Source: Diadema antillarum
Lineage: Eukaryota
Direction: 5' to 3'
Assembly (NCBI RefSeq): GCF_040938485.1
Contig: NW_027271416.1
Coordinates: 1-64,000 of the forward strand
DNA: 64,000 nucleotides
Under the pieces are notes generated by a model. That model was not told the DNA's origin. It searched no databases and worked only from the letters and a program-made list of their open reading frames with translations. Numbering within the stretch: position 1 is the stretch's first letter; the number at the start of each line of letters is the position of its first letter. A program made the translations under genes and the position numbers. Below, piece by piece: positions 17,444 to 59,090 of the stretch.

Positions 17444-20400
17444 TTTTTTTTTGTATATATACAGCAAAAATATTATATGGGATATAGTCATAACAGCAAT
17501 ATCACTTTTGAGTCCTGTAAATACCTGTATTTCTCAGCCGCTCGCTCATACGTATTATTTGTTTTATAATGTCGACGCACATATTTCTTCTGAGAAAAGA
17601 AAAAGTCAATGTAATCTACACACAACTCAACACTTTTGAATATACAGTTATTCAAAATATCATTTTGAAAATTCCATTTAAATACAATATGAACAAGATC
17701 ATTTTTTTTTCCCACTGGTACGCAAGGTTATCCAAAAGGAAGAAGGGAAGAGAGAGAGAGACTGCGATCATGCTCCCCTTTCAGTTCAGCAGAAAGGACA
17801 CCGATACATGTATTTTGATATGTCTTCTTCAACCTTATTGTATAAGTTCACTGCATTCCAAGTGCAACCATGTGTCGCAAAAATCACAAGAAACCCATTG
17901 ATCTTCACGGCTTCTTCTTTCCTGCATGCTGGACATACATATCTAACATCATCTGATTCAATTCCTTCCTTTTTGTTCCTCTTTTTTTTTTCTTCTACGC
18001 TATTCTTCTTCGTATGCATCTTCTTTGTTTTCTTCTCTCTAGTTTTACATTTCTTCTTCCAAGCTCACTTCTCTCTCTTTTTTTTTTTGCACTCAGATTC
18101 TTCCAACTTCATTTCTTCCTTCTGTTTTATTTCTTCTAATATATGGTTCATTTCTTCTATCCTCATCACAATCCCATCTCTGTGATCTTTCTTTTTCCTG
18201 TACCCAACTTCATCTCTTCTATCTTCTTCTTTAGATCTTCCCTCTTCTTTCTCAATGTCTTTGTGCCTTCTTCTTTTTTTTTCTTTGTTTCTCTCTCTTT
18301 CTCTTCCTTTCTTTTCTTCAACTCTCTCTTCTGTTTGGATTTCATGTGAGTTTTGAAATCATCTCCTCATATTGCTTCAGTAGCTGCAATTTCCTTTTTT
18401 GACTTCCTGGAACGTGTATTTCGGGAAACTCGATATAATGTTCCAGAAACGGGGACATTTTTATTTGAAACTTTATTTCATTTTGGGACTAACGAACCTT
18501 ATGAATAACGATCGAGGTGTAACCGTATATATACATGTATTATATATATAGTTATATGTATGTATATAATTATATATTTATTCATAACAATGTCACAATA
18601 GAGGAGTGCATTAAATGTCAATTGCTTTGATTATAATTCAAAATCTGAATTTTCGGGGGCCTCCCACTTCGTCGGAAATCCAAGAGGATAGTTAGCGGGG
18701 AGGAGGGGGGAGGTAATAAATCAGTGATCTGAAAGCGCACGCGCCACATACTGTACACACGTAATTATAGGGGGGGGGGGTGAGCGGTAACTAGTCAAGA
18801 GCCATCTCTGTACGAGTTTCGAACTTTTTTTGTTCACGTACGCAATTCCACGTAAATACGTACACTACTATCGTTCAGTTATTTGCCGACAGTTGTCAGG
18901 TCGACGACTAGCGCCTATTCGTACGACTTATCTCAACTTTGCGGGATTTTAACTAAAAAAATCACGGCCTACTCACTAATTCCACTAACTTCAGTAGACG
19001 ATACCTTTCCGGCCATCGGGAATCTCCAGATGTGGCTAATTGCATTTAAACATCATAAAATAGTCGTGAATACTTTGAATATTGCAATTGGTTTGAGCAT
19101 CGAATTCTTAGCATTGCGCACACGCGTACTGCAGTGCGTGCAGTGCGTATTCGAGAATGTAGGGCAGATATTCGCGGTCATCATCAACTACACTCGTGCG
19201 CTAAGGGGTGAGCGGTTACTAGTCAGGCTACTGTACTTGATAAAAAATATCAATTATAATTATAACTAACTGACACTAACCAACATATAAATAANNNNNN
19301 NNNNNNNNNNNNNNNNNNNNNNNNNNNNNNNNNNNNNNNNNNNNNNNNNNNNNNNNNNNNNNNNNNNNNNNNNNNNNNNNNNNNNNNNNNNNNNNNNNNN
19401 NNNNNNNNNNNNNNNNNNNNNNNNNNNNNNNNNNNNNNNNNNNNNNNNNNNNNNNTCAAGTTTCCAATCTGAATATCATTTATGCCAATACTACAATGGC
19501 CTTTAACCTTATTCTGCTTATTTGCCGTCTATGAGATGTATCTTGCATATTTCACATAAATCAAGATTATGCAACAATGTCAAGACCTATGAATTGCTTC
19601 TGCCTAAATGAAAGATCACTGCAGACCCACCTGGTGTCATACTCGTTGGACCTCAGGTCGTATTTATACGTAGGCATAAAGCTGAGGGCGCCCTCTTGGA
19701 AGCCAACAAACGCCTTCTTATGTCTCATGCTGTTCAGGAGCTGGTCCTTCTCCTGCAACACATGGAGCTTCTTGGGGGCAGCCAAGAACTTGATGGCTTC
19801 CGTCGACAGGTCCTCAATGCGATAGTTCAGGTCGCCAAACCACAACACATAGCTGCGACAGAGCATGGAAGGATCAAGTCAGTGTTACTGAAGGTTTGAG
19901 GGGATAAACAGGTCCTATTTCTTTCATTTGAATTGATTCTTTTTCTCATATCTCTCTTCATAGATATCTATCTGCACCATGATGGATATTGGTGCATTGC
20001 AAGATTTCACATTATTATCATTATCCATCTTGTTCACTTAAAAATGACCACAGGAGGAAAAATCCTGCAATAGGAATGTGTTAATCATTTATCTTTGTCT
20101 TCATACTTCACTGAATCACTTCAGCGAAAGTTGTTACAATTAAGAGTGTCTAACATGCTTGTCTTGTAATCATTAGCTTTTATGTAAAACAGTGTGCGGT
20201 GCTTACTCGTGGTCTAGTATTGTGGTAGCATTGCACTGTGGGAATTCCTGCGTAGCTATTATGGTGTGGAACTCTTTGTCCCTCTTCTCCCAGCCATCCT
20301 GGTGAGGTGAGAGGTGGACTGCAATCAGGCACACACTCCTCCCGTAGCAGTCAAATCGGACACTCACTGCACCCTTATTGCCCTAGGGTGTATGAGATAC

Positions 20401-28450: not shown

Positions 28451-29525
28451 ATGGCTGATTCCCTCTGGTTGCTCGCCCACAAGTCGTCGTCCGTTTCAAC
28501 TGAACATTCACGTCGTCGACGTCCGACCAAGTTCACCAAACTGCAGCTAGAGAGACTCGAGGTCGAATTCAGCAGAGACCGATATCCTGACATCGTTTCT
28601 AGAGAGAAGCTGGCCGCAGCATTTGGTCTCAGCGAAGCCAGGATTCGAGTAAGCAATATTTTGTTTTATCCCAGTAAATAACGCTTTTGCATGTCTCATT
28701 ATTATTTTGTCAATTAGTAAATATTTTCTAACAGACTTCTTACTGAAAGTAAGTGTTAGCGTATCTGCGCTCAAGGATTATGAGCCAATTTGCTATTTAT
28801 CGTGATTTATCTAAGTACTAAAACTATTCATAATGTTACTTTCATCAATGAAGAGGATCTTAATGGCTCAAAAATGGTAGTCTATTATATTATACACAGT
28901 AAAAGAAACGTGTCATGGAGAATATTAAGTGTATTATCATTGTTATAACGACGACGACGATGGTGATGATGATATTAATGTGCTTTCATACATGAAATCT
29001 AAACAAAGAGTGATGTGTCCTTTTCTCCATGTGCAGGTCTGGTTCCAGAATCGTCGTGCACGTTATCGTCGAGCCGTCCGTACTTCCGATCCAGTTCAAT
29101 CAGTTACCGGGATGAGCCGCATCGACAACGTGTTCGCAGAACCTGAGGTGGAATACAGTAGGAAGCGAAAGCGATCTTCGACATTCGATGTCATCGAACG
29201 GGAGATCACACCGCCACCTAAGAAGTTCGCCATCAACGACTCACCGATGTCAGTCGATTTCCTGTCTCGTAGCAGCCGATCACCGAAATCCTGGTCGTCT
29301 TTCCGCATCAGCAAGGAGCGTGACATCATCAATTTGCAGCAGACAACATCTCATCGAAAGCAGCAGGGCGCCACCAATCCCTTGATGTCTGTAGACTTCC
29401 TCTCCCGAAGCAGCCGACAGATCTCTTCGCATCCATCGATAAAAGCGAGTCTCTACTACTGTACCACACCAGCTCCATTCTACACGTCTATTGGTCATCG
29501 TTTCGTCTACATCATACCATCCTGA
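28451..29525 (+). CDS. pmar1: pmar1/micro1-like paired-class (Q50) homeobox repressor, copy A, intact, 228 aa
   Basis: Exons 28451-28648 and 29037-29525. The intron falls between homeodomain residues 46 and 47, the typical PRD-class position. HD reads RRRRPTKF...[11 protein letters not shown]...RIR|[12 protein letters not shown]. Two [11 protein letters not shown] eh1-like motifs at 29247 and 29385. The pmar1/micro1 assignment rests on recalled family features (RRRRPT arm, double eh1-like motif, tandem clustering), not a search. Confidence 0.85.
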
Positions 29526-29849: not shown

Positions 29850-30069
29850 NNNNNNNNNNNNNNNNNNNNNNNNNNNNNNNNNNNNNNNNNNNNNNNNNNN
29901 NNNNNNNNNNNNNNNNNNNNNNNNNNNNNNNNNNNNNNNNNNNNNNNNNNNNNNNNNNNNNNNNNNNNNNNNNNNNNNNNNNNNNNNNNNNNNNNNNNNN
30001 NNNNNNNNNNNNNNNNNNNNNNNNNNNNNNNNNNNNNNNNNNNNNNNNNNNNNNNNNNNNNNNNNNNNN
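29850..30069. other. Assembly gap (220 N), paralogous to the (TA)n-rich segment near 41430-41570
   Basis: Run of N; both flanks match the region downstream of copy C. Confidence 0.95.
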
Positions 30070-31869: not shown

Positions 31870-33378
31870 CTGAAATTCATAGTCCTTGCCGAATTGAAGA
31901 TGTATCTGATTTAATATGGAAAAAAAAATGGGTAAAGCAAAAGAGTTCAAGCTAATAAACCTCAGGTCTCGTAACTACGCCAGGTTTTATTGTGATGTGA
32001 AGATAGGTGAGTCAGTTACTCTGTATCGGGATTCAGTTCCTGACATTTGAGTTCAACTCAGCTCAGTTCACTTTCATATTTTCTCTGCATCTGGATGTTC
32101 TCTGGAAATAACACATGAAAATGGCGATATATATAATATCGACACAAAATAAAAACATTTACAGAGCATACATTCACAGTGTAATGACCACAATAATCTT
32201 TGAAGTAGTTGAACAAAATTCAATAAAATCTAAGAAGTCAATGACACATTTTTTTAGAGAAAAAATGTAGGGGTTTGTGTATTTAGAATGTTCGTTATAA
32301 GTGATGGCAGCCTCAGAAAGAGGAAACACACACAGAAATGGTGAAACTGCTACTGAAACTTTTCTTATGCTAACTTAATGGCATCTCCGGATGGAAACGA
32401 GTGAGGAAGGAAGAAAATAAGCAACGTAAGAAGTTACGTGTGCAGAGCAGTGAATTAGGTAATGAAATGTGCTTATAATTATTACTGCATGAAGAGCGGT
32501 TGTAAAATGTAATGCAAAAGTGATATACATGTGAATATGATAGACGTGTGTGTGTTGTGTATCATGTATGAGTGGTCTTGTGTAATGCCAAATACGTAGT
32601 GATAGAGAGTGTACGCGACGGTATTGGTGGTTTGCTTGCTCTCTTGTGAGCATGTATTATCGTGTATAGCTTGTTTATTGCTTTAAATTTCTGACGTCTA
32701 AGCCTATACCTCTACAATGTTAGTTTTAATGAAAGGAATTATTTCAGAGTTGCAAAAGGAAAACGCCTACTCTTACTCTCTACAGGTAAGCCATAATGAT
32801 GTAAATGGAACACATGTAATAATACTTTCGAACAAATATTCATTTATTTGTCTTTACCCCTGATCTCCTAATGTAATTTTGTATCTGCCGTTTGTAACTT
32901 TGTTTGGATCACTAGCAATCAAAGTAAGTACTTGACTTACTTGTTATGATTAGGGTATTTCAATGCCAGCGTTTACTTCCATTAAACCAATAAAAACAGA
33001 ACATTTATACATGTCCCTAATTTTGTGCATTTGCTTCTTCGTGTCATATTTTACAAAGTGTCTGTTTTGGGGGGTTTATATATGTATCTGATTATGAAGA
33101 CGATAATGATTATAATTATACCTCTTACTATGCATTTGTACTACTACTTCTGCTACTACCACTACTATAAAAAAAATGCTACTACTGCTACTGTGAAATA
33201 CAAGTAAAATTACGTAATACGACACAATGCTATAATAACAAGGGTTAAAGCAATAACATTTGTTATATTGATAAAGTGATGATAGTACGAAGAATCATAA
33301 TTTTGTCGTGGTAATCATCATTGTTGTTTTCATCGCTAATCATCATTATCGTCCAATAATGTACCCTGTCTTAAGGTA

Positions 33379-33818
33379 CAGTTGAACCTCTCTTATCCGG
33401 CCTCCCTTTATCCGGATCTCTCTATTATACGGACGCAGTCTCGCCGTGATTTTTTGTTAAATAATTACGGGAGGAAAGGGGGATTCCCAACTCCTTGAGA
33501 ACTCCTACACAGACACACATGAATTACATATACTTGATACATTTCTTAATAGTTATTTAGGTAAATAATCCCAAGAATTTATAAAAGAAAATGATTTAAT
33601 TCTTGCAAACACGAACCTCTATTTTGGGGTCTGTTACTGAGTGTAACAATGAAAAGGTTGCAGTATACACATTACTACACGTGGTACTACAATAGGCTAC
33701 TGTACATGTGTATGTATATTATGTACATGTATAAAGCATTGAGTCTCCCGTATCCGGCCAAATCCCTTATCCGGATGAGCCTCGGTCCCGACTTGTCCGG
33801 ATACGAGAGGTTCAACTG
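33379..33818. mobile_element. Tigger-like MITE, 440 bp, present only in duplication unit 1
   Basis: TA|CAGTTGAACCTCTCTTATCCGG ... CCGGATACGAGAGGTTCAACTG|TA. The paralogous empty site at ~44700 has a single TA. Confidence 0.85.
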
Positions 33819-36580
33819 TATATCCAATGACATTTTCACATAGTTTATGCTCGCTGTGATGTGATAATTATTGTCGACCCTTATCATGCTTATAGGTTGG
33901 CCTGAGACTCCTGATTGACATGTTGTTGTTATTAAGTTTTGGGGCGTACAATTCGTGTGCCGAATATTGACGCCATCTACGTGCGGGTCTCTGTATCTTT
34001 TTGGCTTTCGTTGTTGTTACAGTACTTTTCATGACGGGTCCCAGGTCCGGGCGTCAGTGAAACGTTCCTCCCTGATTGAAAGTACGCGGACTGACCGATA
34101 TAGAGGTGACTATAGTCGAGGCGACGTAGACTGAAATCCTCCATAGCACAATTTTCAAAAGGGATTCATTGAATGACCTAACGAGACGGTTTACTTTCAT
34201 CTCGTTAGAGACAGTGTAGCGGCAGAATGTCATTGTAGTTTAAAGACGAGACCGAATCAATAGCAGCTCTTTGAGGACAATCATTGAACGTGCTATTCAA
34301 GCGACAGGCTGAATAGACATGACACCACCCGACACATTCAATATTCATCGAGTTCTTTTGAAGCGGGGGAGTTCTAATGACGATTTAGTATCTGCAATAA
34401 ATGTTGTGCTTCATAAAGCCACTGCCCCTGATCTTGATCCCCTCAAAGGGATCGGCAATATTTTCATCGCCTTAGTTCACTAAACCTTCAACTCGTGCTT
34501 TTGTTCAGTTACTTTGTAGGCAGAGTAAAGAGTAGGGAAGCGAGCTTGCAAAATTGCATCTGAAGAAGATCCGGCTCTAATTGAGCGCGTGAATCACAAG
34601 GCGTACTGAATGGTAGCGTGAGAATGATCACAGTTTAGAAGCTACCCCATACTCTATCCTTTCTTGATCGAAAGAAAAGTTAGAAAATGGATAAAGCCCT
34701 ACATCACTGAATTCGTTAAAATGACATCTCAAATGATATATGTTTCCAAATCTTGTGTGGAAGTTACCAAAACAATTTACTCACATTCAATCTATTTGCC
34801 ATAATTATTTCATCAGTCTTGAACGCTGATTTTTTTTTTCTTTTTATCACAGCCTATCCACCACGGAGAGATCTGCATAGGTTTCCAAAATTCCAACAAA
34901 CATCATTAACATTAAGGTCTTGCTCCCTTATCGGTGATTACAGATCTTATACAACTCAAATCGTAATAACTATATTACTGACTAATTACGTAATAACTAA
35001 AACAGGACTCGATGATGATGTCGTGACCTGTTTCAAGAACTTGCGTCTTTCACATCAAGTTGTTTCAGGAATGTCATGACTGTAACAATGAGGACGCTCT
35101 TGTTATAATCTTTACAAGGTAGTATATAGGAGAAATCGTAAAGTGGAAAGTCGTGTCCCAGATACATTCTTATTTTCTATTGGGGAACTTATCATACCCC
35201 TGTTTCGTGAAAACATTTTCGTTTTTACTTTCTGATTTATTCTGTCTTAATGTAATGGTTTGTTTGGTCCGGAATCTAGTGTCCTTTTGTTATAAGTTAA
35301 AAAGAGAACATACATGATTATCTTTAGCTTCTCTGTTTCACAGTGGTTGATATTCAAGCAAACTTGTTTAGTTCTTCACGAGTTCACTGAACTTTCATAT
35401 GCAAGTACGCCGACTAACATTAATCCAAGTTAGAATACAATGTTAATAATGCATCCCATCCTGTATGACTTGAATGCTGATATTCAATATTATATTTTTA
35501 TCATTTGAACTTTTATTCAATTCTTCGAATTCTTAAAATGTTAATCATCCTACATTTGAATTGAATTTAATCTAAGCTCTGCTGGGCAATGAAAACTAGA
35601 AGTACAAAACTGAGGAGCTTGATACAATGCAATGTGACAATAAAAATGTAGATAAATTATGTGATTTGAAGTACCACTGTCGGACTGTGTGTGCTCATAT
35701 GTCTATTGTATTTTTTAGAGTATTGCTTGATTTTATATTTGTTCAAGACTGTTTTTTTTTGTTGTATGTTTGAGTGTCTTTGCGTGCGTCTGTGTGTGTG
35801 TGTGTGTGTGTGTGTTCGGTGTGTATGTGTTGTGCACGTGTTCATCAATATCGTATCATAATAGGCAGCTGTGTCTTCTTAGTATCAAATTTTTCAATAT
35901 TTACCATCTGTACATTTTATCAATTCTCCCTTGTATTTCTCATTCCAGATTCCGTTTGCATCACTTCATTGTTGATCCAAAGTTAACTAAAAATTCTAGT
36001 CCCTCTCTAAAATTCATTAAGTTATTTATGAAGTTAAGACCTAATTTTAATCAAGCATGAATACCGGCGAGCATTTACCCTTATCTCAAAGTCTAGCCCA
36101 CTGTAACAACAAAAGAACGACACATACATAACTATACATACACGCAAGCACACACGCATATAAGTAATCATTGTGTTACTTGGGTTACACCAAACACACA
36201 CACACACACACAGACTCAAACAAACAAACAAACAAACAAACACACAAACAAACAAACAAACAAACAAACAAACAACCATGAACAAATATAAAATTGAGCA
36301 ATACTCAAAAATACCACAGGAACAAGATAAGATGAAATGAATGAAATCTCAATGTCAAACCGTAATGTTTATTATCAAACATTGAAGATAAAGAAACAAA
36401 ACAATGTTGCTGAATTCATCGCGAGTGTCTCAGAACAGAGGAATAGTGTTCTGAAGTCGGAAGCATTCTTGTTTACAAAATTGTTTGCAGGAAAGTGTCA
36501 AACAAACTTCTCAATATGAGAAATGATATACAGTATCACATTTCAGTCACTCCTATGAAAGTGCGGCAGCTTCACAGCAG

Positions 36581-37612
36581 TCAGTGTGGAACGACGAAGA
36601 CGTAAGGATGACTAAACATGCAGAATGGCGACTGGATGTGTTGGAGACTCCCTTCACGGTATGGCGATGGATACGAAGAAGTCGGTCGGCTGCTTCGGGA
36701 GAGGAAGTCTACAGACATCAAGGGATTGGTGGCGCCCTGCTGCTTTCGATGAGATGTCGTCTGCGGCAAATTGATGACGTCATGTTCCTCGCTGATGCGG
36801 AAAGTCGACCAGGAATCCGGTGATCGGCTGCTACGAGACAGGAAATCGACTGACATCGGTGAATCGTTGATGGCGGACTTCTTGGGCGGCGTGGTGTTCT
36901 CCTGGTCGATGACGTCGCATTCCGTTGATCGCTTACGCTTTCTTGTGGATGAAGACTCTGTTCCCTTGATGTCGGTTGACCTGTTGATCTGGTTGTAGCT
37001 GATGTCTGGTCGAGCAGAGAGGGAGTTGAGTGAAGCTCGACGAAGGCGTGAACGACGATTCTGGAACCAGACCTGAAGTTAAACAAATCACAGATCTGAC
37101 GTTAGCATTTTGCTTCATGCACAAACATTTTTTTAAACATAAAACGTAACATGCTACTGCCAGAAAGAAGTCACCAAATGTCGAGGAAAACATAAAGGAC
37201 GTGCTTCTTAACCTCGGCCATTTATATTCTCGCTTTGCTAGAAATGTTTGAGTCCCAAATTTTCATCTATCTCAGGTATTGCATTGTAATAACAGCCTAT
37301 GAGAATATAGCTGTAATTTGAAACCATTAATTTACATTCAGTAATATCAAAACAGTATTAAAAGAGAAAATCAACTTTACTTCATCATTTATACATCTTT
37401 GCTTTACATACTTGTATTCTGTCTTCATCGAGGCCGAGTGCGGCAGCCAGTTTCTCTCTGGAAACGATGTCGGGATATCGGTCGATGTCGAATTCAGCCT
37501 TCAGCCTCTCGAGCTGCCATTCGGTGAACACGGTCGGACGTCGACGACGAAGACCCTTGGTAGGAACGGACGTCGAGACTTGAGGGAGAAGGGAGAGCAG
37601 TGAATCAGCCAT
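36581..37612 (-). CDS. pmar1: pmar1/micro1-like homeobox, copy B, intact, 230 aa
   Basis: Exons 37612-37412 and 37072-36581, open throughout on hand translation. HD reads RRRRPTVFTEWQLERLKAEFDIDRYPD...LGLDEDRIQ|VWFQNRRSRLRR. Two MSVDFLS motifs. Confidence 0.85.
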
Positions 37613-39853: not shown

Positions 39854-41120
39854 ATGGCTGATTCCCTCTGGTTGCTCGCCCACAAGTCGTCGTCAGTTTC
39901 AACCAAACAGTCACGTCGTCGACGTCCGATCAAGTTCACCAAACTGCAGATGGAGAGACTCGAAGTCGAAATCAGCAGAGACCGATATCCTGACATCGTT
40001 TTTAGAAAGAAGCTGGCCGCAGAATTTGGGCTCACCGAAGCCAGGATTCGAGTAAGTAATATTTTGTTTTTTCCCATCAGTAAATAACGCTTATGTATGT
40101 CTCATTATTTTGTGAATTTAGTAAATACCTTGTAACAACGCTGTTACTGAAGTGTTAGTGTATTCTGCGCTAAAAGATATTCAATTTCAATTTCAATTTC
40201 GGTTTTATTAAAAAACACCAAATAAAAGTCCAAAGACTAACCATATTTGGTTTACATCAAAATTTACACCTTTACAACAGGGAGACATAAAGAAAAGAAA
40301 TAAAAAAAAACTGACGTTTTACTCAACTGATTCATATTGACAGCCCCCGGAAAAAAAGACAAACTATACTCACACTATCATAAAAATTGATAGCACTAAT
40401 ATGAGCCCATTTACTACTTATCGTGATTTTCATACAAGTACTGAAACTACTAATGATTCAACTTAATGGCTCAAATAATTGTAGTCCAACATCATTTTAA
40501 CGTGTTGTGGAAAATGCGCTGTATATTACGTATAGTATCATTATTATAACGACGATGATGATGATTATGATAATGTTAATTTACTCTTGTACGTGAAATC
40601 TAAACAAACTGTGATGTGTTCTTTTCTCCATGTGCAGGTCTGGTTCCAGAATCGTCGTGCACGGTATCGTCGAGCCGTCCGTACGTCCGAGCCAGTTCAA
40701 CCAGTTGCCGGGATGAACCACATCGACAAAGAGTTCACACAACCTGAGGTAGAATACAGTAGGAAGCGAAAGCGACTTTCGACATGCGATGTCATCGACC
40801 AGGAGAATACACCGCCGCCCAAGAAGTCCGCCATCAACGATTCACCGATGTCAGTCAATTTCCTGTCTCGTAGCAGCCGATCACCGGATTCCTGGTCGAC
40901 TTTCTGCATCAGCAAGGAGCATGACGTCATCAATTTGCCGCAGACGACATCTCATCAAAAGCAGCAGGGCGCCACCAATCCCTTGATGTCTGTAGACTTT
41001 CTCTCCCGAAGCAGCCGACCGACTTCTTCGTATCCATCGACTAAAGCGAGTCTCTACTACACACCAGCTCCATTCTACACGTCTTTTGGTCATCGTTTCG
41101 TCTACATCATACCATCCTGA
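39854..41120 (+). CDS. pmar1: pmar1/micro1-like homeobox, copy C, intact, 226 aa (paralogue of A)
   Basis: Exons 39854-40051 and 40638-41120 with GT-AG sites. First eh1-like motif is MSVNFLS, second is MSVDFLS. Confidence 0.85.
40180..40398. mobile_element. ~220 bp insertion in the copy C intron, absent from copy A; probable retroelement 3' end
   Basis: Starts with (ttcaat)n and ggttttatt (AATAAA on the minus strand). The flanks join directly in the A intron (~28770). Confidence 0.5.
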
Positions 41121-44529: not shown

Positions 44530-47425
44530 ACTGTGAAATACAAGTAAAATTACGCTATACGACGCAATGCTATTATAGCAAGGGTTAAAGAAATAATAAT
44601 TGATAAAGTGATGATAGTATGAAGAATTTTGTCATGGTAATCATTTCTGTTGTTGTCATCGCTAATCATCATTATTATCCACTAATGTACGCTGTCTTAA
44701 TGGTATATCCAGTGACATTTTCATATGGTTTGTGCTGCTGTGATGTGATAATTATTGTCGACCCTTATCATGCTTATAGGTTGGCCTGAGACTCCTGATT
44801 GACATGTTGTTGTTCTTATTAAGTTTTGTGGCGTACAATTCGTGTGCCGAATATTGACGCCATCTACGTGCGGGTCTCTGTATCTTTTTGGCTTTCGTTG
44901 TTGTTACGGTACTTTTCATGAGGGGTCCCAGGTCCGGCGTCAGTGAAACGTTCCCCCCTGATTGACATTATGCGGACTGGCCGATATAGAGGTGACACAG
45001 TCGACGCGACATCCACTGAAATCCTCCATAGCACAATTTTCAAAAGGGATTCACTGAGTGACCTAACGAGGCAGTTTACTTTCATCTCGTTAGAGACAGT
45101 GTAGCGGCAGAGCGTCATTGTAGTTTAAAGGCGAGACCGAATCAATAGCAGCTCTTATATAGCAGGAATAGCAGGACAATCATTGAACGTGCTATTCAAG
45201 TGACAGGCTGAATAGACATGACACCACCCGACACATTCTATACGCATCGAGATCTTTTGAAGCGGTCAGAGCTCTAATGACGATTTAGTATTAACAATGA
45301 AAAGTCGTGCTTCTTAAAGTCACTGCCCCTGATCTTGATCCCCTCAAAGAATCGGTAATATGCCTATTCGCTAAACCTTCGACTTGTGCTCTTGTTCAGC
45401 TACTTTGTCGGCAGAGTAAAGAGTAGGGAAGCGAGCGTGCAAAAATTGCATCTGAAGAAGATCCGGCTCTAATTGAGCGCGTGAATCACAAGGCGTGCTG
45501 AATTTTAGCGTGAGAGTGATCACAGTATGGAAGCTACCCCAATACTCTATCCTTTCTTGATCGAAAGAAAAGTTAGAAAATGGATAAAGCCCTACATCAC
45601 TGAATTCGTTAAAATGGCATCTCAAATGATATGTGTTTCCAAATCTTGTTTGGAAGTTACCAAAACAATTTACTCACATTCAATCTATTTGCCATAATCA
45701 TTTCATCAGTCTTAAAAGCTGTTTTTTTTTAATGTTCCTTTTTACCACAGCCTATCAACCACGGAGAGATGTGCACAGGTTTCCAAAATTCCAACAAACA
45801 TCATTAACATTAAGGTCTTGCTCCTTTTTCGATGATTACAGATCTCATACAACTCAAATCGTAATAACTATATTACTGACTAATTACGTAATAACTAAAA
45901 CAGGACTCGATGATGATGTGGTGACCTGTTTCAAGAACTTGCGTCTTTCGCATCAAGTTGTTTCAGGACTGTCATGACTGTAACAATGAGGACGCTCTTG
46001 TCATAATTTCATACAATGTATCAGGAGAATCGTAAAATGATAAGTCATCTCCCATATACATTATTATTTCCTATTAGGAAATGTGATTATATCCATGTTT
46101 CGTGAAAACATTTTCGTTTTTACTTTTCTTCGACTTTCTGATTTATTCGATCTTAATATAACGGTTTGTTTGGTCCGGAATCTAGTGTCCTTTTGTCATA
46201 AGTCAAATAGAGAACAGACATGATTATCTTTAACTTCTCTGTTTCACAGTGGTTGATATTCAAGCAATCTTGTTTAGTTCTTCTCGAGACCCCTCACCTC
46301 ATGGAAGTAAGCTTACTAACATTGATCCAAGTTGAAATGCAATGTTCATAGTACATCCTATACTTTTGAATTGGATGCTGGTATTCAATATTTTGTCATT
46401 TGACCTTTTATTAAATTCTTAGAATTATTTACATTTTAATTTCCCTACGTTTGAACTGAATTTAATCTTAGGTCTGCTGGGCGATGTATACTAGAAGTAC
46501 AAAACTGAGAAGCCTGGTACAATGCGATGTGAGAATAATAATGTATATATGCCTTTGTGATTTGAATTACCACTGTGTGTGCGCACATGTCTATGGTATC
46601 TTTTTAGAGCATTGCTTGATTTTGTTTTTGTTCATGACTATTTTTGTTTGTTTGAGTGTGTGTTTGTGTGTGCGCGTGTGTCTGTGTTTGTTGTTGTGTG
46701 TGTATCTGCTGTGCACATGTTTATCAATATCGTTTATAGGAGGCAGCTACGTCTTCTTGCTATCAAACTGGTCAATTTTTACCATCTGTACATTGATTCT
46801 ATCAATTCTCCCTTGTATTTCTGTCATACCAGATTCCGCTTACATCACTTCATTGTTGACCCACAGTTTACTAAGAATTCTGGTCCCTCTCTCCCATTCA
46901 AGCTATTTGTGAAGTTAAGACCTAATTTCAATCAAGCACGAATACCGACAAGAGATACCTTTATCTCAAAAGCGAACCCACTGTAACAACAAAAGAACGA
47001 CACATACATAACTGCATATTCACGCAGGCACAAACGTATACAAGTTATCATTTTGTTACTTGGGTTAAACAAAACACAAACACAGACTCAAACAAACAAG
47101 CAAACAAACAACCATGAACAAACATAAGATTATATTTTACTCAAAAATACCGCAGGAATAAGGTAAGATGAACTGAATGAAATCTTAATGTCTAATGGTA
47201 ATGTTTATTATTAAACACTAAATATAAAGAAGCAAAACGATGTTGCTGAATTCAAGTCTGAATCATCGCGGGTGTCTCAGAAAAGAGGAACAGATTTCTG
47301 AAGTCGGAAGAATGCTGGTCTTCTATCATTGTTTGCTTGCACAGAATCTAATACACTTCTCAATAATATGAGAAATGAAATATCACATGTCAGTCACTCC
47401 TATGAATGTGGCGGCATCACAGCGT

Positions 47426-48537
47426 TCAGTGTGGAACGACGAAGGCATAAGGATGACCAAACATGTAGAATGGCGACGGGCTGTGGTAGAGACTCCCTTC
47501 ACGGTATGGCGATTGATACGAAGAAGTCGGTCGGCTGCTTCGGGAGAGAAAGTCTACAGACATCAAGGTATTGGTGGCGCCCTGCTGCTTTCGATGAGAT
47601 GTCGTCTGCGGCAAATTGATGACGTCATGCTCCTCGCTGATGCGGAAAGTCGACCAGGAATCCGGTGATCGGCTGCTACGAGACAGGAAATCGACCGACA
47701 TCGGTGAGTCGTTGATGGCGGACTTCTTGGGCGGCGGTGTGTTCTCCTGGTCGATGACATCGCATTCCGTTGATCGCTTACGCTTTCCTGTGGATGAAGA
47801 CTCCATTCCCTTGATGCCGATTGGCCTGTTGATCTGATTGTCTCTGGTGTCTGGTCGAGCAGAGAGGGATTTGAGTGAAGTTCGACGAAGGCGCGAATGG
47901 CGATTCTGGAACCAGACCTGAAGATAAACAAAGAATAAATCTGACGTTAGCATTTTGCTTCATGCATGAACAATTTTTAAACATAAAACGTAACATGCTA
48001 CTGCCACAATCAAGTCACCAAAAACATAAAGGACGTGGTTCTTAACATCGGCCATTCATATTCTCGCTGTGCTAGGAATGTTTGAGTCCCAAATTTTCAT
48101 CTATCTCAATTTCTCAATATGGGCTGTTTATTGAGATAGATGTTGAGATAGATAGAATCTCGATCGCAATCTATATCAATTTTCATCTATCTCAGGTATT
48201 GCATTGTAATAACAGCTAATGAAAAGATAGTTGCAATTTGAAACCAGTAATTTATATTCAGTAATATTATCATTTACAGTATTACAAGAAAAAATCAACT
48301 TTACTTCATCATTCATACATCTTTGCTTTTACATACTTGTATTCTATCTTCATCGAGGCCGAGTGAGGCAGCCAATTTCTCTCTAGAGACGATGTCGGGA
48401 TATCTGTCGATGTCGAATTCAGCCTTCAGCTTCTCGAGCTGCCATTCGGTGAACACTGTCGGACGTCGACGACGAGGGCCTTTGGTAGGAACGGACGTCG
48501 AGACTTGAGGGAGAAGGGAGAGCGGTGAATCGGCAAA
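47426..48537 (-). pseudogene. pmar1: pmar1/micro1-like copy D (paralogue of B): frame open but start codon lost and HD R53H
   Basis: Exons 48537-48337 and 47917-47426 with splice sites intact. B's ATG GCT GAT corresponds to TTT GCC GAT here. The upstream in-frame stop is at 48595-48597 with no ATG in between. The recognition helix reads VWFQNRH. Confidence 0.7.
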
Positions 48538-51500
48538 ACCGTATGGATTGGTTTTGTAAAGATATCGGTTTGTGGGGAAACGTTGAGATACGACTTAACT
48601 TCGAGAGAATCTTAGTGAATTGTGGTGGTAGTACCAAAGTAGCTAGTGACAGCGGGTAATTGATGCTAAACTAAAGTTGGTCATCAAAGGGTAATGCGTG
48701 ATAAGAAGATAAGTACGTTACGTATTAGCAAAGCCGCGTATCACTTTCACGCGCCATAAGCGTTTGATAGGAACGGACTTTTGATTGGTCCGATAAACCG
48801 ACCAATGAGATTACCCGAGTAGCGGCTTGTTTAAAGTTTCACGTCCGGCTATTCACAGGAGCGCGAATCCCCTGATCTACGTTGGCTGGGAAATTACAAT
48901 AGAACTTTAATTTGTTTTCCTTTTGTTCATTAGCGACCCGATTGTCGGTTCGCTGCCGACGAACCGGTCTTGTATCATCTTCCTGCATGGGTACAATAGC
49001 GTATTGCCGCTGTTCTACGACTTGGATTGTTTCTTCATTTTTCATCGGAAATCGGGCGCAGTGAACGGTCGATTATTGTGGAATTGACTAAAGCTTGTAA
49101 GACTGTTCAGAATGATCATCGCGTCAATGCAAAGAGTGAAGGAAATTGAGGCTGACGTATGCTTCAAAGAACGTTGATTTCTAAGCACATACGGTGAATT
49201 TTAAGAACACTTTTTTCTTCTTCTATATATTGCCTTTTCTGCTGATAACGGTTTGTAGTTTACATTGTAATTACCAGTCAGTGAAAACAATATCAGAATC
49301 AAGAAATTGTATTTGCACAATAATAACGCATGTAATTATTTTATCAGCAAACGTTGTCTTACTATGGGTAAATCAAACTTTTTTTCGTTCTCACGGGTCC
49401 CCTCCAAACATGGCAAGCATCGTCTTGCAAGCACACTTCATTATTTCATAATTACTTTTATTTCTTTATTCTAGTGACTTTCAATGTTTAATCCCCTATG
49501 TTAACTTTGATCAATGTTCTGCTATAAAAATATAGTTGAAGTATGATAGATTGAGGAGTTTGATACAATGTGAGAATGAAGCTTTTGATATGACTTTCTG
49601 TTAATATGATACTTGGAATGACCGACCAACCGCGGCCGCGTGCGTGGTGGTAGTGTTGGTGATGGCGGTGTGTGTATGTGTGCGTGTGTGCTCTGGACGT
49701 TTAAATATGTGTGTGCCCGTGTTCATCAATGTCGTATGATAGGTTATCTTCTTAAATTGCTTTCAAACTGGTCAATCTCTACCGTTTTCTCTATGTTTCA
49801 TTCCGTTCTCTTAGTATCTCTATGTTACATCAGATTCTGCTTATATCTGTATATAGCTTGGTGGCTGCAACGAGAGTACTCTAAAAAATTCAGTCCATCA
49901 TTGCCATAAAGTTTTCTATGAAGATTTAAACCCCTTCACAATTCAACTCAAGCACAAAGTAAACATACGTTCGAGCATTTACCTGTAGGTAATACGCGAG
50001 ACCAATCACACATAATAAACACACATACACACATACACACATAAGCACACGCACACACAAGCAAATATGCCATATAGAATTTCATAAGCAATGACTGAAA
50101 TTTTTGTCAGTAACGAAGATACACACATACACACACACGCACACACACACACACACACACACGGAGACATGGACACAAAGGTCTCAAAACGTGATAGTAA
50201 TTTAATGAACTTTTGCCAAGACACAAAACAATCAAACACAGGAAAGTAGCTAATTGTTTAATGATTGAAGCATACAACAAGAATCAGCATACAAATTATA
50301 CATCCAAAAGAACCAAAGAGTAGTATGAACAGACCAATATTACAAGTAATTTTTGTACACAGGCTTATCATTTGATTAAAGTTACATTGGATGAAATGCT
50401 GAACCCTCGACGGTTTCAGTTCTTGTATATAGAGAGCAGAGAGAGAGATAGAGAGAGAGGGGGGGGGGGAGATACCGAGAGTATATACAAAGAAGGAGAC
50501 TACAGACTCATGGTATGATAAACGCTTTAGATGGATGGTCAGATTTTCTAACGTTGCTATGCGGGGGAATTAATTACAACGAGCCACAGAAAGTTTGGTT
50601 ATGCAAAAACTATCAACAAAAGACTGGATAAAAATGTAAATCATGTCAGCATTCATTTTTCAATCGGAGAATTGGTATACAGAATTAATGCTTGTTTTCA
50701 CTTGTGTAATCATCTTACCATCACGTACGATCGTAAGGAAGTCGTGCTGTGCAGGACTGTACAAGGATGCCAATTATAAAGAATATGAAGGCTTTATACT
50801 ACAATGTATATTAACATTAACTAATTTGTTATATTGTAACGACTACATATTATTTTGTGTACAATAATAGTTTGATAACATGACCGAAACATCCTTAAAG
50901 ATAATACACTACATTTTTAGCTATATGACAGCTCATTAAAATTAATGTGTGAAATTGGTCTTGCAATCCTACCATGCCGACTTGGTTATACAAAGATTAT
51001 GTTGTGACATTAATCAAACATATGTTTTTATGGTATGCTACAAATAATTATGATAACCATCACGGCCTTTCAGTTAACTTCAAATCTCTCAAGTGTTGGT
51101 AACATACTGTTTTTCAATCATTCCATTTGGAGCTAAATACATCGCCGCAAACTCCTCCGTTACAAGTGACGTCAGTAATTCAATACGCCACTGTTTTACT
51201 TCACACTTACAAAAGGGGAATGGGCTAATGCACATTATATCGCAAGAAACATCATCAGATAGATCAAACAACAATGCGGATAAAGTAGAAAAAAAGGGAT
51301 TGATCGAAAAAAGGAAAAAGAAAGGTGGAGGACACATTCACTTTGTTTATATCACATCGCCTGTGCGATCATTTATCCAAAATCGGGTAGTATAACATTA
51401 TTCTCTCTATCAATCTCTTCCACATAATCAGTGGATTCTCCAGCAACATGTACACATTCCATTTGTGTAGCTTCATTCATTCAAGCATATAGCACAGTGT

Positions 51501-58885: not shown

Positions 58886-59090
58886 TTGTAACCTGTCTTC
58901 ATCGAGGACCAGAGCAGCAGCCAGTTTCTCTCTGGAAACGATGTCGGGATATCGGTCGATGTCGAATTCAGCCTTCAGCCTCTCGAGCTGCTCTTCGGTT
59001 AACACGGTCGGACGTCGACGATGAAGGCCTTTGGTAGGAACGGACGTCGAGACTTGGGGGAAAAGCGAAAGTGCATGAAGAATCAGCCAT
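58886..59090 (-). pseudogene. pmar1: pmar1/micro1-like copy E, exon 1 only, frameshifted
   Basis: ATG GCT GAT at 59090 is out of frame with the HD (25 nt versus 21 nt in B between GAT and CAA). HD helices 1-2 are recognisable, the normal GT donor is absent, and I saw no VWFQN exon downstream. Confidence 0.85.

What the first reader, a model, noticed from the sequence alone, without database searches (positions are those of the whole stretch)
40785..41039. Apparent gene-conversion tract: copy C carries a B/D-type eh1 region inside an A-type gene
Seen: C's promoter, exon 1, intron, exon-2 start ([12 protein letters not shown]...[10 protein letters not shown]) and C-terminus (KASLYY...FVYIIPS) are A-type. 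Over this ~255 bp tract C matches B and D at about a dozen residues where A differs (CDVIDQEN, KKS, SPDSWST, EHDVINLP, RPTSSY) and at synonymous ccgccc. By eye there are roughly 10 nt differences C versus B and roughly twice that C versus A. Even A is far closer to B/D in this tract than in the flanks. Inference: recurrent conversion between inverted paralogues homogenises exactly the segment holding both corepressor-binding motifs while the homeodomains diverge.
Basis: partly seen in the sequence, partly recalled or inferred. Interest (0 to 1): 0.7.

Follow-up and report, generated by a model that had tools for sequence, protein, structure and literature searches.

The report
Gene-conversion patches in Diadema pmar1 genes
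Four sea-urchin (Diadema antillarum) pmar1/micro1-type repressor homeobox genes share a sharply bounded 254-bp stretch that an old gene conversion spread across the whole gene family, and copy C carries a second, younger patch of about 104-125 bp copied from a neighbouring inverted paralogue; this is a clear but mechanistically ordinary case.

Summary
In detail: in 40785-41039 C differs from B and D at 10 and 9 sites and from A at 24, while the flanks group A with C.

The reading is only partly right. The genes are pmar1/micro1/hbox12-family repressors of Diadema antillarum. The tract is a module shared by all 22 copies found, in three old subtypes. There are no fixed differences between subtypes in 40786-41039, against 26-34 just upstream. 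Cross-type dS is 0.11-0.19 in the tract and 0.46-1.36 in the homeodomain exon. Orthologues in D. setosum show normal synonymous rates in the tract, so the module was homogenised by conversion at or before the species split. I found no wholesale homogenisation since then.

Most sites where C matches B/D and A differs are changes private to the A lineage. C's allele C' on the other haplotype and D. setosum type I both keep C's states there.

A true C-specific conversion is confined to 40921-41024 (at most 40915-39). At five sites C'=A=A' but C=D, and B fits almost as well. This patch covers the spacer and the second eh1-like motif only.

Support is good but not overwhelming: simulation P about 8e-5, triplet test p about 1e-3, AU test not significant.

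The scan already reported the family-wide patch on the allelic contig (s1-229803).

The parts
28451..28648 (+). Gene A (type I) exon 1, from ATG to homeodomain position 46
   Evidence: ORF, GT donor and 62-codon ungapped alignment. The annotated protein P0003 has 228 aa.
29037..29525 (+). Gene A exon 2. Its copy of the shared module is about 29184-29438.
   Evidence: A is 90.9% identical to C in the tract and has 13 lineage-unique changes against 5 in C'.
36581..37072 (-). Gene B (type II) exon 2. Module at 36665-36919. Intact possible donor.
   Evidence: B matches C at 4 of the 5 diagnostic sites.
37412..37612 (-). Gene B exon 1, head-to-head with C
   Evidence: (Pfam Homeodomain, E=2e-11).
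39854..40051 (+). Gene C (type I) exon 1
   Evidence: Pfam Homeodomain. About 98% identical to allele C'. P0001 is 100% identical.
40638..41120 (+). Gene C exon 2, from homeodomain helix 3 to the stop codon
40786..41039 (+). Family-wide shared module, the older conversion tract. There are no fixed differences between the three subtypes in either species.
   Evidence: fixed differences; dS; at least 90% identity in 22 copies.
40848..40877 (+). First eh1-like motif (MSVNFLSRSS). It lies outside the C-specific patch.
   Evidence: Translation. It aligns with [10 protein letters not shown] of S. purpuratus Pmar1.
40921..41024 (+). Nested, younger conversion patch in C (minimum extent; the maximum is 40915-41039). 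It encodes HDVINLP, the spacer and the second motif.
   Evidence: At 40921, 40926, 40939, 41000 and 41024, C'=A=A' but C=D. Triplet walk p about 1e-3. Simulation P(k>=5)=8e-5.
40986..41015 (+). Second eh1-like motif ([10 protein letters not shown]), inside the patch
   Evidence: Translation.
47426..47917 (-). Gene D (type II) exon 2. Module at 47510-47764. Best-fitting donor. It carries R-to-H at homeodomain position 53.
   Evidence: D matches C at 5 of 5 diagnostic sites.
48337..48537 (-). Gene D exon 1. The conserved ATG reads TTT (48535-48537).

Best explanation
The four genes are pmar1/micro1/hbox12-family paired-like repressor genes of Diadema antillarum. They belong to a cluster of at least 22 copies that fall into three anciently diverged subtypes. 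Two layers of non-reciprocal homologous exchange (interlocus gene conversion) explain the pattern. Layer 1 is old. A 254-bp segment (40786-41039 in C) encodes both eh1-like repression motifs and the spacer between them. It was homogenised across all three subtypes at about or before the D. antillarum / D. setosum split. Since then each copy has diverged at the ordinary neutral rate, and the A lineage has picked up the most changes, mostly nonsynonymous. Layer 2 is young. On the window's haplotype only, a 104-125-bp piece of that module in C (40921-41024) was overwritten from a neighbouring inverted type II copy. D fits best and B fits almost as well. This imported HDVINLP and reverted three type-I-specific states. 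What is shown: the borders, the dS contrast, the polarity of the changes, and the five-site patch. What is inferred: the repair mechanism (heteroduplex or synthesis-dependent repair templated by a paralogue), the identity of the donor, and the idea that the sharp common borders arise because exchange can only start and resolve inside the block that is still homologous.
For: Identity: P0001 (D. antillarum) is 100% identical to C, and distant hits are named Micro1/Pmar1 or paired class homeodomain repressor. The motifs align with S. purpuratus Pmar1. Layer 1: 22 copies are at least 90% identical in the tract. There are no fixed inter-type differences in 40786-41039, against 26-34 in the roughly 146 bp upstream and 13-15 in the type I tail. 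Cross-type dS is 0.46-1.36 in exon 1 and 0.11-0.19 in the tract. Same-type orthologues between species have tract dS 0.11-0.15, equal to exon 1 dS of 0.11-0.16, so there is no special synonymous constraint. The tract tree is a star with the types interleaved, and AU tests reject type I monophyly (p=0.038) and type III monophyly (p=0.025). PHI on the whole of exon 2 gives p<5e-4. Layer 2: C and C' are sisters in the flanks (100/98) and differ by about 1.8% upstream. C85 is the only other copy of the unique flanking DNA, at 98% identity, so it is the other haplotype. At five sites C'=A=A' and C=D, while C keeps the type I state at 40914 and from 41040 onward. The same statistic is zero for C', A and A' with seven donors (Fisher p=0.004). 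The parametric null gives P(k>=5)=8e-5. The triplet walk gives p about 1e-3. C groups with D/B/B' in the tract at 88/91. Independent reads: run X2 has an exact 75-bp piece across 41039/41040 with T at 41024, and it has C's private A at 40957 with only C at 40939. Run X1 has the C'-like form.
Against: The AU test does not reject C+C' as sisters over the whole tract (p=0.166). PHI within the tract alone is not significant (p=0.31-0.39). Two of the five diagnostic sites (40921, 40926) are transitions in CpG context, and the family shows CpG homoplasy: T at 40905 recurs in D. setosum s5858. At 40926, 41000 and 41024, C also equals D. setosum type I, so retention of ancestral states in C combined with an A'-to-C' conversion is a less parsimonious alternative. 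The Logan contigs are short unitigs, so none spans the whole patch together with both flanks. The date of layer 1 rests on about 59 synonymous sites per pair.
Confidence: 0.8

Rival explanations
1. One reading: the whole 255-bp tract of C was recently converted from B or D, and A keeps an older 'A-type' tract.
For: In the four-gene comparison 18 sites are private to A and C is 96% identical to B and D. The triplet walk with A as major parent picks 40786-41031 with p<5e-6.
Against: C' and D. setosum type I share C's states across 40786-40914 and at 41020-41031. The A or A+A' states there are derived, 11 nonsynonymous and 2 synonymous. C keeps the type-I-specific A at 40914. C-A distance is the same in the tract and the 5' flank, at 9.4% and 9.5%.
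Confidence: 0.06
2. Reverse polarity: C keeps the ancestral states and its allele C' was converted by A' over about 40926-41024. The two remaining B/D-like sites in C (40921, 40939) come from a separate very short patch or from parallel mutation.
For: At 40926, 41000 and 41024, C equals D. setosum type I. C' and A' differ at only 1 of 150 sites in 40846-40995.
Against: It needs two events where one is enough. C' and A' are both close to the family consensus there, so their near-identity says little. The A at 40921 is found only in C, B, B' and D, and the C at 40939 only in those four and in p129/p192.
Confidence: 0.08
3. No conversion into C: the five matches to B/D are parallel mutations at hypermutable (CpG) sites.
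For: 40921 and 40926 lie in CpG context, and homoplasy is seen at 40905, 40957, 40817 and 40841.
Against: A null with strong rate heterogeneity (alpha 0.6) and deliberately long branches gives P(k>=5)=8e-5. None of 14 private changes in A, A' and C' match any donor. 40939 is an A-to-C transversion. All five sites fall within 104 bp.
Confidence: 0.04
4. Assembly or polishing artefact: reads from B or D mis-mapped onto C and overwrote a few bases.
For: The module is nearly identical in many copies, so short reads multi-map. Logan unitigs break inside it.
Against: C's private A at 40957 lies between patch sites and was not overwritten. Raw-read unitigs of run X2 contain A at 40957 with only C at 40939, and an exact piece 41010-41084 joins T at 41024 to the type I tail.
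Confidence: 0.03
5. The module's family-wide similarity comes from purifying selection on the protein or on the nucleotides, not from conversion.
For: The two motif cores are conserved as far as S. purpuratus and Hemicentrotus.
Against: Tract dN/dS is about 0.5, so the protein is not strongly constrained. Orthologous tract dS equals exon 1 dS. The RKRKR codons immediately upstream are conserved as protein yet carry fixed synonymous differences at 40763 and 40769.
Confidence: 0.02

Closest known systems
Echinoid pmar1 / micro1 / hbox12 multigene family (S. purpuratus Pmar1, H. pulcherrimus Micro1, P. lividus Hbox12)
   Same: A paired-like homeodomain, two exons split by one intron inside the homeobox, two C-terminal eh1-type repression motifs, and clustered multicopy genes in mixed orientation. 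Sequence homology is E=1e-21 to 1e-24 (PMC5370098; PMC4709884).
   Different: Diadema has three deeply diverged subtypes (exon 1 dS 0.5-1.4). [quoted passage not shown] Here every gene is a mosaic with respect to the module, and C is a mosaic twice over. No paper in the searched library links pmar1 with gene conversion.
Earlier finding of this scan, s1-229803 (allelic contig of the same genome)
   Same: The same family, three subtypes and a younger patch of about 250 bp encoding the two repression motifs, read as patch-wise gene conversion.
   Different: This report adds the nested haplotype-specific patch in C, the exact borders from fixed differences, the D. setosum calibration that dates the main event to about the species split and excludes synonymous constraint, and the A-lineage explanation for most of the 'C=B/D' sites.
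Interlocus gene conversion between closely linked inverted paralogues, for example human RHD/RHCE (my own knowledge, not tested here)
   Same: Tail-to-tail or head-to-head inverted neighbours a few kb apart exchange short internal segments non-reciprocally, giving hybrid alleles that are polymorphic in the population.
   Different: Here the exchange crosses anciently diverged subtypes and is confined to a block made homologous by an earlier conversion. Orientation is not decisive, because direct-repeat copies share the module too.
Pseudogene-templated conversion, for example CYP21A1P to CYP21A2 (my own knowledge)
   Same: The best-fitting donor, D, lacks its start codon and has a substitution at the invariant homeodomain Arg53.
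   Different: B is intact, carries the same motif and fits almost as well, so a pseudogene donor is not established.

Membership tests
pmar1/micro1/hbox12 paired-class repressor family | Paired-like homeodomain with Q50 (WFQNRR) | tested here: met
   Pfam PF00046 matches exon 1 (E=7e-6 for C, 2e-11 for B), and exon 2 continues the profile at positions 46-57. WFQNRR is present.
pmar1/micro1/hbox12 paired-class repressor family | Two exons with a single intron inside the homeobox | tested here: met
   GT donor after homeodomain position 46 and AG acceptor before VWFQ in all copies. The structure is described in PMC5370098.
pmar1/micro1/hbox12 paired-class repressor family | Sequence homology to named Pmar1/Micro1 proteins | tested here: met
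   P0021 Micro1/Pmar1-related (Scaphechinus) E=3.5e-24. P0023 (H. pulcherrimus) E=6.7e-22. P0024, paired class homeodomain repressor (S. purpuratus), E=1.7e-21.
pmar1/micro1/hbox12 paired-class repressor family | Two C-terminal eh1 (Groucho-interaction) motifs | tested here: inconclusive
   Two [10 protein letters not shown] motifs align with those of S. purpuratus Pmar1, and the literature calls them eh1 and necessary for repression (PMC4709884). In Diadema both start with M instead of the canonical F, and binding was not testable.
pmar1/micro1/hbox12 paired-class repressor family | Early vegetal or micromere expression and repression of hesC (double-negative gate) | not testable with these tools
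   No RNA run holds the stretch.
Interlocus (ectopic) gene conversion tract | A high-identity segment bounded on both sides by old divergence within the same genes | tested here: met
   No fixed differences in 254 bp, against 29 upstream and 13 downstream for type I versus II.
Interlocus (ectopic) gene conversion tract | Synonymous divergence is lowered in the tract and this is not explained by constraint | tested here: met
   Cross-type dS is 0.11-0.19 in the tract and 0.46-1.36 in exon 1. Orthologous dS is equal in both partitions.
Interlocus (ectopic) gene conversion tract | Phylogenetic incongruence between tract and flanks | tested here: met
   In the flanks the types are supported at 100/100. 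In the tract, AU tests reject type I (p=0.038) and type III (p=0.025) monophyly. For C+C' alone the AU p is 0.166, which is not significant.
Interlocus (ectopic) gene conversion tract | Non-reciprocity (the donor is unchanged) | tested here: inconclusive
   B, B' and D all keep the donor state and show no type I states in the patch. The pre-event donor allele is not available.
Ongoing concerted evolution (continuous homogenisation within a species) | Paralogues within a species are more alike than the same classes compared between species | tested here: not met
   Mean cross-type tract dS is 0.144 within species and 0.146 between species, and the tract tree does not cluster by species.

The most novel reading that the evidence does not exclude
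The borders of the shared module are held in place by selection and not only by loss of homology. On this reading the repression cassette (two eh1-like motifs and their spacer) behaves as an interchangeable unit that conversion moves among functionally distinct pmar1 subtypes. Decaying copies such as D would then act as a reservoir of spacer variants for intact genes. That would make spacer variation (for example ERDIINLQ versus EHDVINLP) a selected, exchangeable modifier of repressor strength in the micromere gene network.
Probability: 0.1. Interest if true: 0.65.

Novelty: new member of a known kind. Interest (0 to 1): 0.35.

Why it matters
pmar1 sits at the top of the sea-urchin micromere double-negative gate, a textbook gene regulatory network. 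Diadema carries three deeply diverged homeodomain subtypes that nevertheless share one recently unified repression module. This bears on how the family is counted, named and placed in trees: trees built from the C-terminal half will mislead, and species-specific clades in this family need not mean recent duplication. It also gives a clean, datable example of domain-restricted conversion with base-pair-sharp borders, plus a heterozygous nested patch that could be followed in populations. The mechanism itself is ordinary.

Tried and rejected
- **PHI test inside the tract alone:** not significant (p=0.31-0.39). Incompatibility there is uniformly high, so the test has no power within 254 bp.
- **AU test on the four-gene-cluster tract tree:** type I monophyly was not rejected with D. 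antillarum only (p=0.215). It became marginal once D. setosum was added (p=0.038). C+C' sisterhood was never rejected (p=0.166).
- **Triplet walk with A as major parent:** rejected as evidence, because A's private changes inflate it.
- **Logan contigs:** unitigs of 75-316 bp break inside the repeated module. They confirm the 3' junction and some linked states but do not span the patch with both flanks.
- **RNA evidence:** no RNA holder was found, so expression is untested.
- **Pfam PGAP1_2nd hit on exon 2** (E=0.01, below the curated cut-off): treated as noise.
- **Failed or repeated calls:** the first Pfam call failed on a frame error. The regular-expression search missed type III exon 1, which tblastn then recovered.
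- **Nucleotide-level constraint as the cause of the module:** considered and rejected on orthologous dS.
- **What was sent to tools:** Exons were searched separately, by reference. In local scripts, exon 1 and exon 2 alignment columns were combined only as partitions for site counts and for the flank tree.
- **Masked stretches:** the N runs at 19295-19455 and 29850-30069 were left untouched and were excluded from all counts.

Full report
**What is there**

The window is contig C528:1-64000 of a 1.75-Gb assembly. It holds four two-exon homeobox genes in the order A(+), B(-), C(+), D(-). B and C lie head-to-head. A/B and C/D lie tail-to-tail. Exon 1 runs from the ATG to homeodomain position 46, and a phase-0 intron precedes VWFQNRR. 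Pfam finds the two halves of the homeodomain on the two exons.

C's exon 2, searched by reference, is 100% identical to an annotated Diadema antillarum protein on a 513,450-bp contig. It has homologues in D. setosum. More distantly, at E=1e-21 to 1e-24, it matches proteins named Micro1/Pmar1 or 'paired class homeodomain repressor' in Scaphechinus, Hemicentrotus, S. purpuratus and Heliocidaris. The two [10 protein letters not shown] motifs and the RKRKR...TPP.KK segment align with S. purpuratus Pmar1. The literature calls these motifs eh1 and says they are needed for repression (PMC4709884). The two-exon, clustered, mixed-orientation layout matches the hbox12/pmar1/micro1 family (PMC5370098).

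In 40785-41039 the pairwise differences are C-B 10, C-D 9, B-D 9 and C-A 24. A/C differ from B/D by about 44% in the 5' flank and about 30% in the tail. The tract has 18 sites private to A, 3-4 private to each other copy, and one AC|BD site. The 5' flank has 47 AC|BD sites. C's promoter, exon 1, intron and downstream DNA align only to A.

**The tract is a family-wide module**

The genome holds at least 22 copies of the tract, all at least 90% identical to C. By their flanks the genes fall into three subtypes:
- Type I: A, C and their alleles.
- Type II: B, D and eight others.
- Type III: six genes.

Each type has 100/100 support in the flank tree.

Fixed differences between types are 26-34 in the roughly 146 bp upstream of 40785 and zero across 40786-41039. 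For type I against II/III they resume exactly at 41040. These borders hold with D. setosum included.

Nei-Gojobori dS between types is 0.46-1.36 in exon 1 but 0.11-0.19 in the tract. Constraint does not explain this, for three reasons:
- Same-type orthologues in the two species have tract dS 0.11-0.15, equal to exon 1 dS of 0.11-0.16.
- Tract dN/dS is about 0.5.
- The RKRKR codons just upstream are conserved as protein yet carry fixed synonymous differences.

The module therefore has a younger common ancestor than the rest of the genes. For type I it is an internal patch with old divergence on both sides, which is what a conversion tract looks like.

Cross-type tract dS is the same within species (mean 0.144) and between species (0.146), and the two-species tract tree is a star with the types interleaved. 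So the homogenisation dates to about or before the species split and has not continued wholesale since then.

**Most 'C = B/D, A differs' sites are changes in A**

Contig C85 carries a mirror-image A'-B'-C'-D' cluster. It is the only other copy of unique flanking DNA, at 98% identity, so I read it as the other haplotype. C and C' differ by about 1.8% upstream and are sisters in the flanks.

With C', A' and D. setosum type I as references, the 18 'A-private' sites fall into four groups:
- Seven changed in A alone: 40801, 40887, 40889, 40899, 40946, 41023, 41031.
- Five changed in A plus A': 40786, 40799, 40807, 40820, 41020.
- One (40828, giving KKS) is a derived state shared by C, C', B, B', D and D'. 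This hints at an older local exchange.
- The rest form a clustered set specific to C.

CDVIDQEN, SPDSWST, RPTSSY and CCG CCC are therefore ancestral states that C merely keeps. A's acceleration is modest: 13 unique changes against 5 in C' (p=0.10), with 11 nonsynonymous and 2 synonymous. Both motif cores remain intact.

**A genuine, smaller conversion in C**

C differs from C' at 40921, 40926, 40939, 41000 and 41024. At each of these sites C'=A=A' while C=D. B differs from C at 40919 and 41000. C keeps the type-I-specific A at 40914 and type I states from 41040 onward. The patch is therefore 104 bp at minimum and 125 bp at maximum. One C-private change (40957) and one D-private change (40980) lie inside it. 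It encodes HDVINLP, the spacer and the second motif (40986-41015), but not the first motif (40848-40877).

Evidence for the patch:
- Triplet walk: p about 1e-3.
- Simulation with strong rate heterogeneity and deliberately long branches: P(k>=5)=8e-5.
- The same statistic is zero for C', A and A' with seven donors (Fisher p=0.004).
- C groups with D/B/B' in the tract at 88/91.

Cautions:
- The AU test does not reject C+C' as sisters (p=0.166).
- Two of the five sites lie in CpG context, and the family shows CpG homoplasy.
- At three of the five sites C also equals D. setosum type I, so a two-event alternative (A' converted C', plus a short patch in C) is possible but less parsimonious.

**Assembly check**

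Only Logan unitigs were available. Run X2 has an exact piece 41010-41084 joining T at 41024 to the type I tail. It also has C's private A at 40957, and only C at 40939. Run X1 has C's exact 5' flank but a C'-like tail piece (41021A, 41024C, 41042A). Both forms therefore exist in sequenced animals. A polishing artefact is unlikely, because A at 40957 survives between patch sites.

**Mechanism and novelty**

The pattern fits ordinary homology-directed repair templated by a paralogue. The sharp common borders are most simply explained by exchange being able to start and resolve only within the block that is still homologous. That part is inference.

The phenomenon is a known kind. The searched library has no paper linking pmar1 with gene conversion, and the P. 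lividus survey reported no chimeric copies. This scan had already described the family-wide patch on the allelic contig (s1-229803).

Noticed in passing
window 48535-48537 (-) and 47897-47899 (-): Gene D reads TTT where all other copies have the start ATG, and there is no in-frame Met in exon 1. It also has His at the normally invariant homeodomain Arg53 (WFQNRH). D looks like a decaying copy, although its exon 2 frame is open.
   Followed up: partly
window 58886-59071 (-); also C528:71495-71680 (-): Orphan type II exon 1 copies (90% and 87% identical to B's exon 1 peptide). No module or exon 2 copy lies nearby, and the second copy has an internal stop. The second matches an earlier scan note about an orphan homeobox exon next to TRIM genes.
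   Followed up: partly
window about 40181-40401 (C intron): C's intron is 586 bp, against 388-389 bp in A and C'. The extra roughly 220 bp has about ten-fold higher unitig depth and contig break points at both ends, so it is a repeat insertion specific to this allele.
   Followed up: partly
window 40696-40784 (linker between homeodomain and RKRKR in C): Alleles C and C' differ at 17 of 150 nucleotides and 10 of 34 residues here, against about 1.8% upstream. With D. setosum as outgroup, C has 22 unique flank changes against 8 in A (p=0.016). The linker is a hot spot of nonsynonymous change.
   Followed up: partly
window about 33372-33832: A repeat of about 450 bp has at least 40 copies at 95-98% identity on many contigs, which suggests a young high-copy mobile element. 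It lies in the A-B intergenic stretch that has no counterpart on the other haplotype.
   Followed up: no
C528:129358-137454 versus C528:192029-197966: Two gene pairs (p129/p134 and p192/p197) about 62.7 kb apart are nearly identical, and their tracts are identical. This is either a very recent segmental duplication or a duplicated assembly stretch.
   Followed up: no
C85:197054-198016 (+): One family member (q198) has frameshifts in both exon 1 and exon 2 and is a pseudogene.
   Followed up: no
window 44959-48647 versus C85:290899-294569: D and D', the copy at the matching position on the other haplotype, are only about 84% identical. D is no closer to D' than to B', while A/A' and B/B' are about 95% identical. 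The haplotypes probably differ structurally beyond C.
   Followed up: partly
window 40828 (TCC, KKS): A derived state is shared by the physical neighbours B, C and D and their C85 counterparts across subtypes. It is absent from A, D. setosum type I and the rest of the family. This may be a trace of an older local exchange, but it rests on one site.
   Followed up: partly
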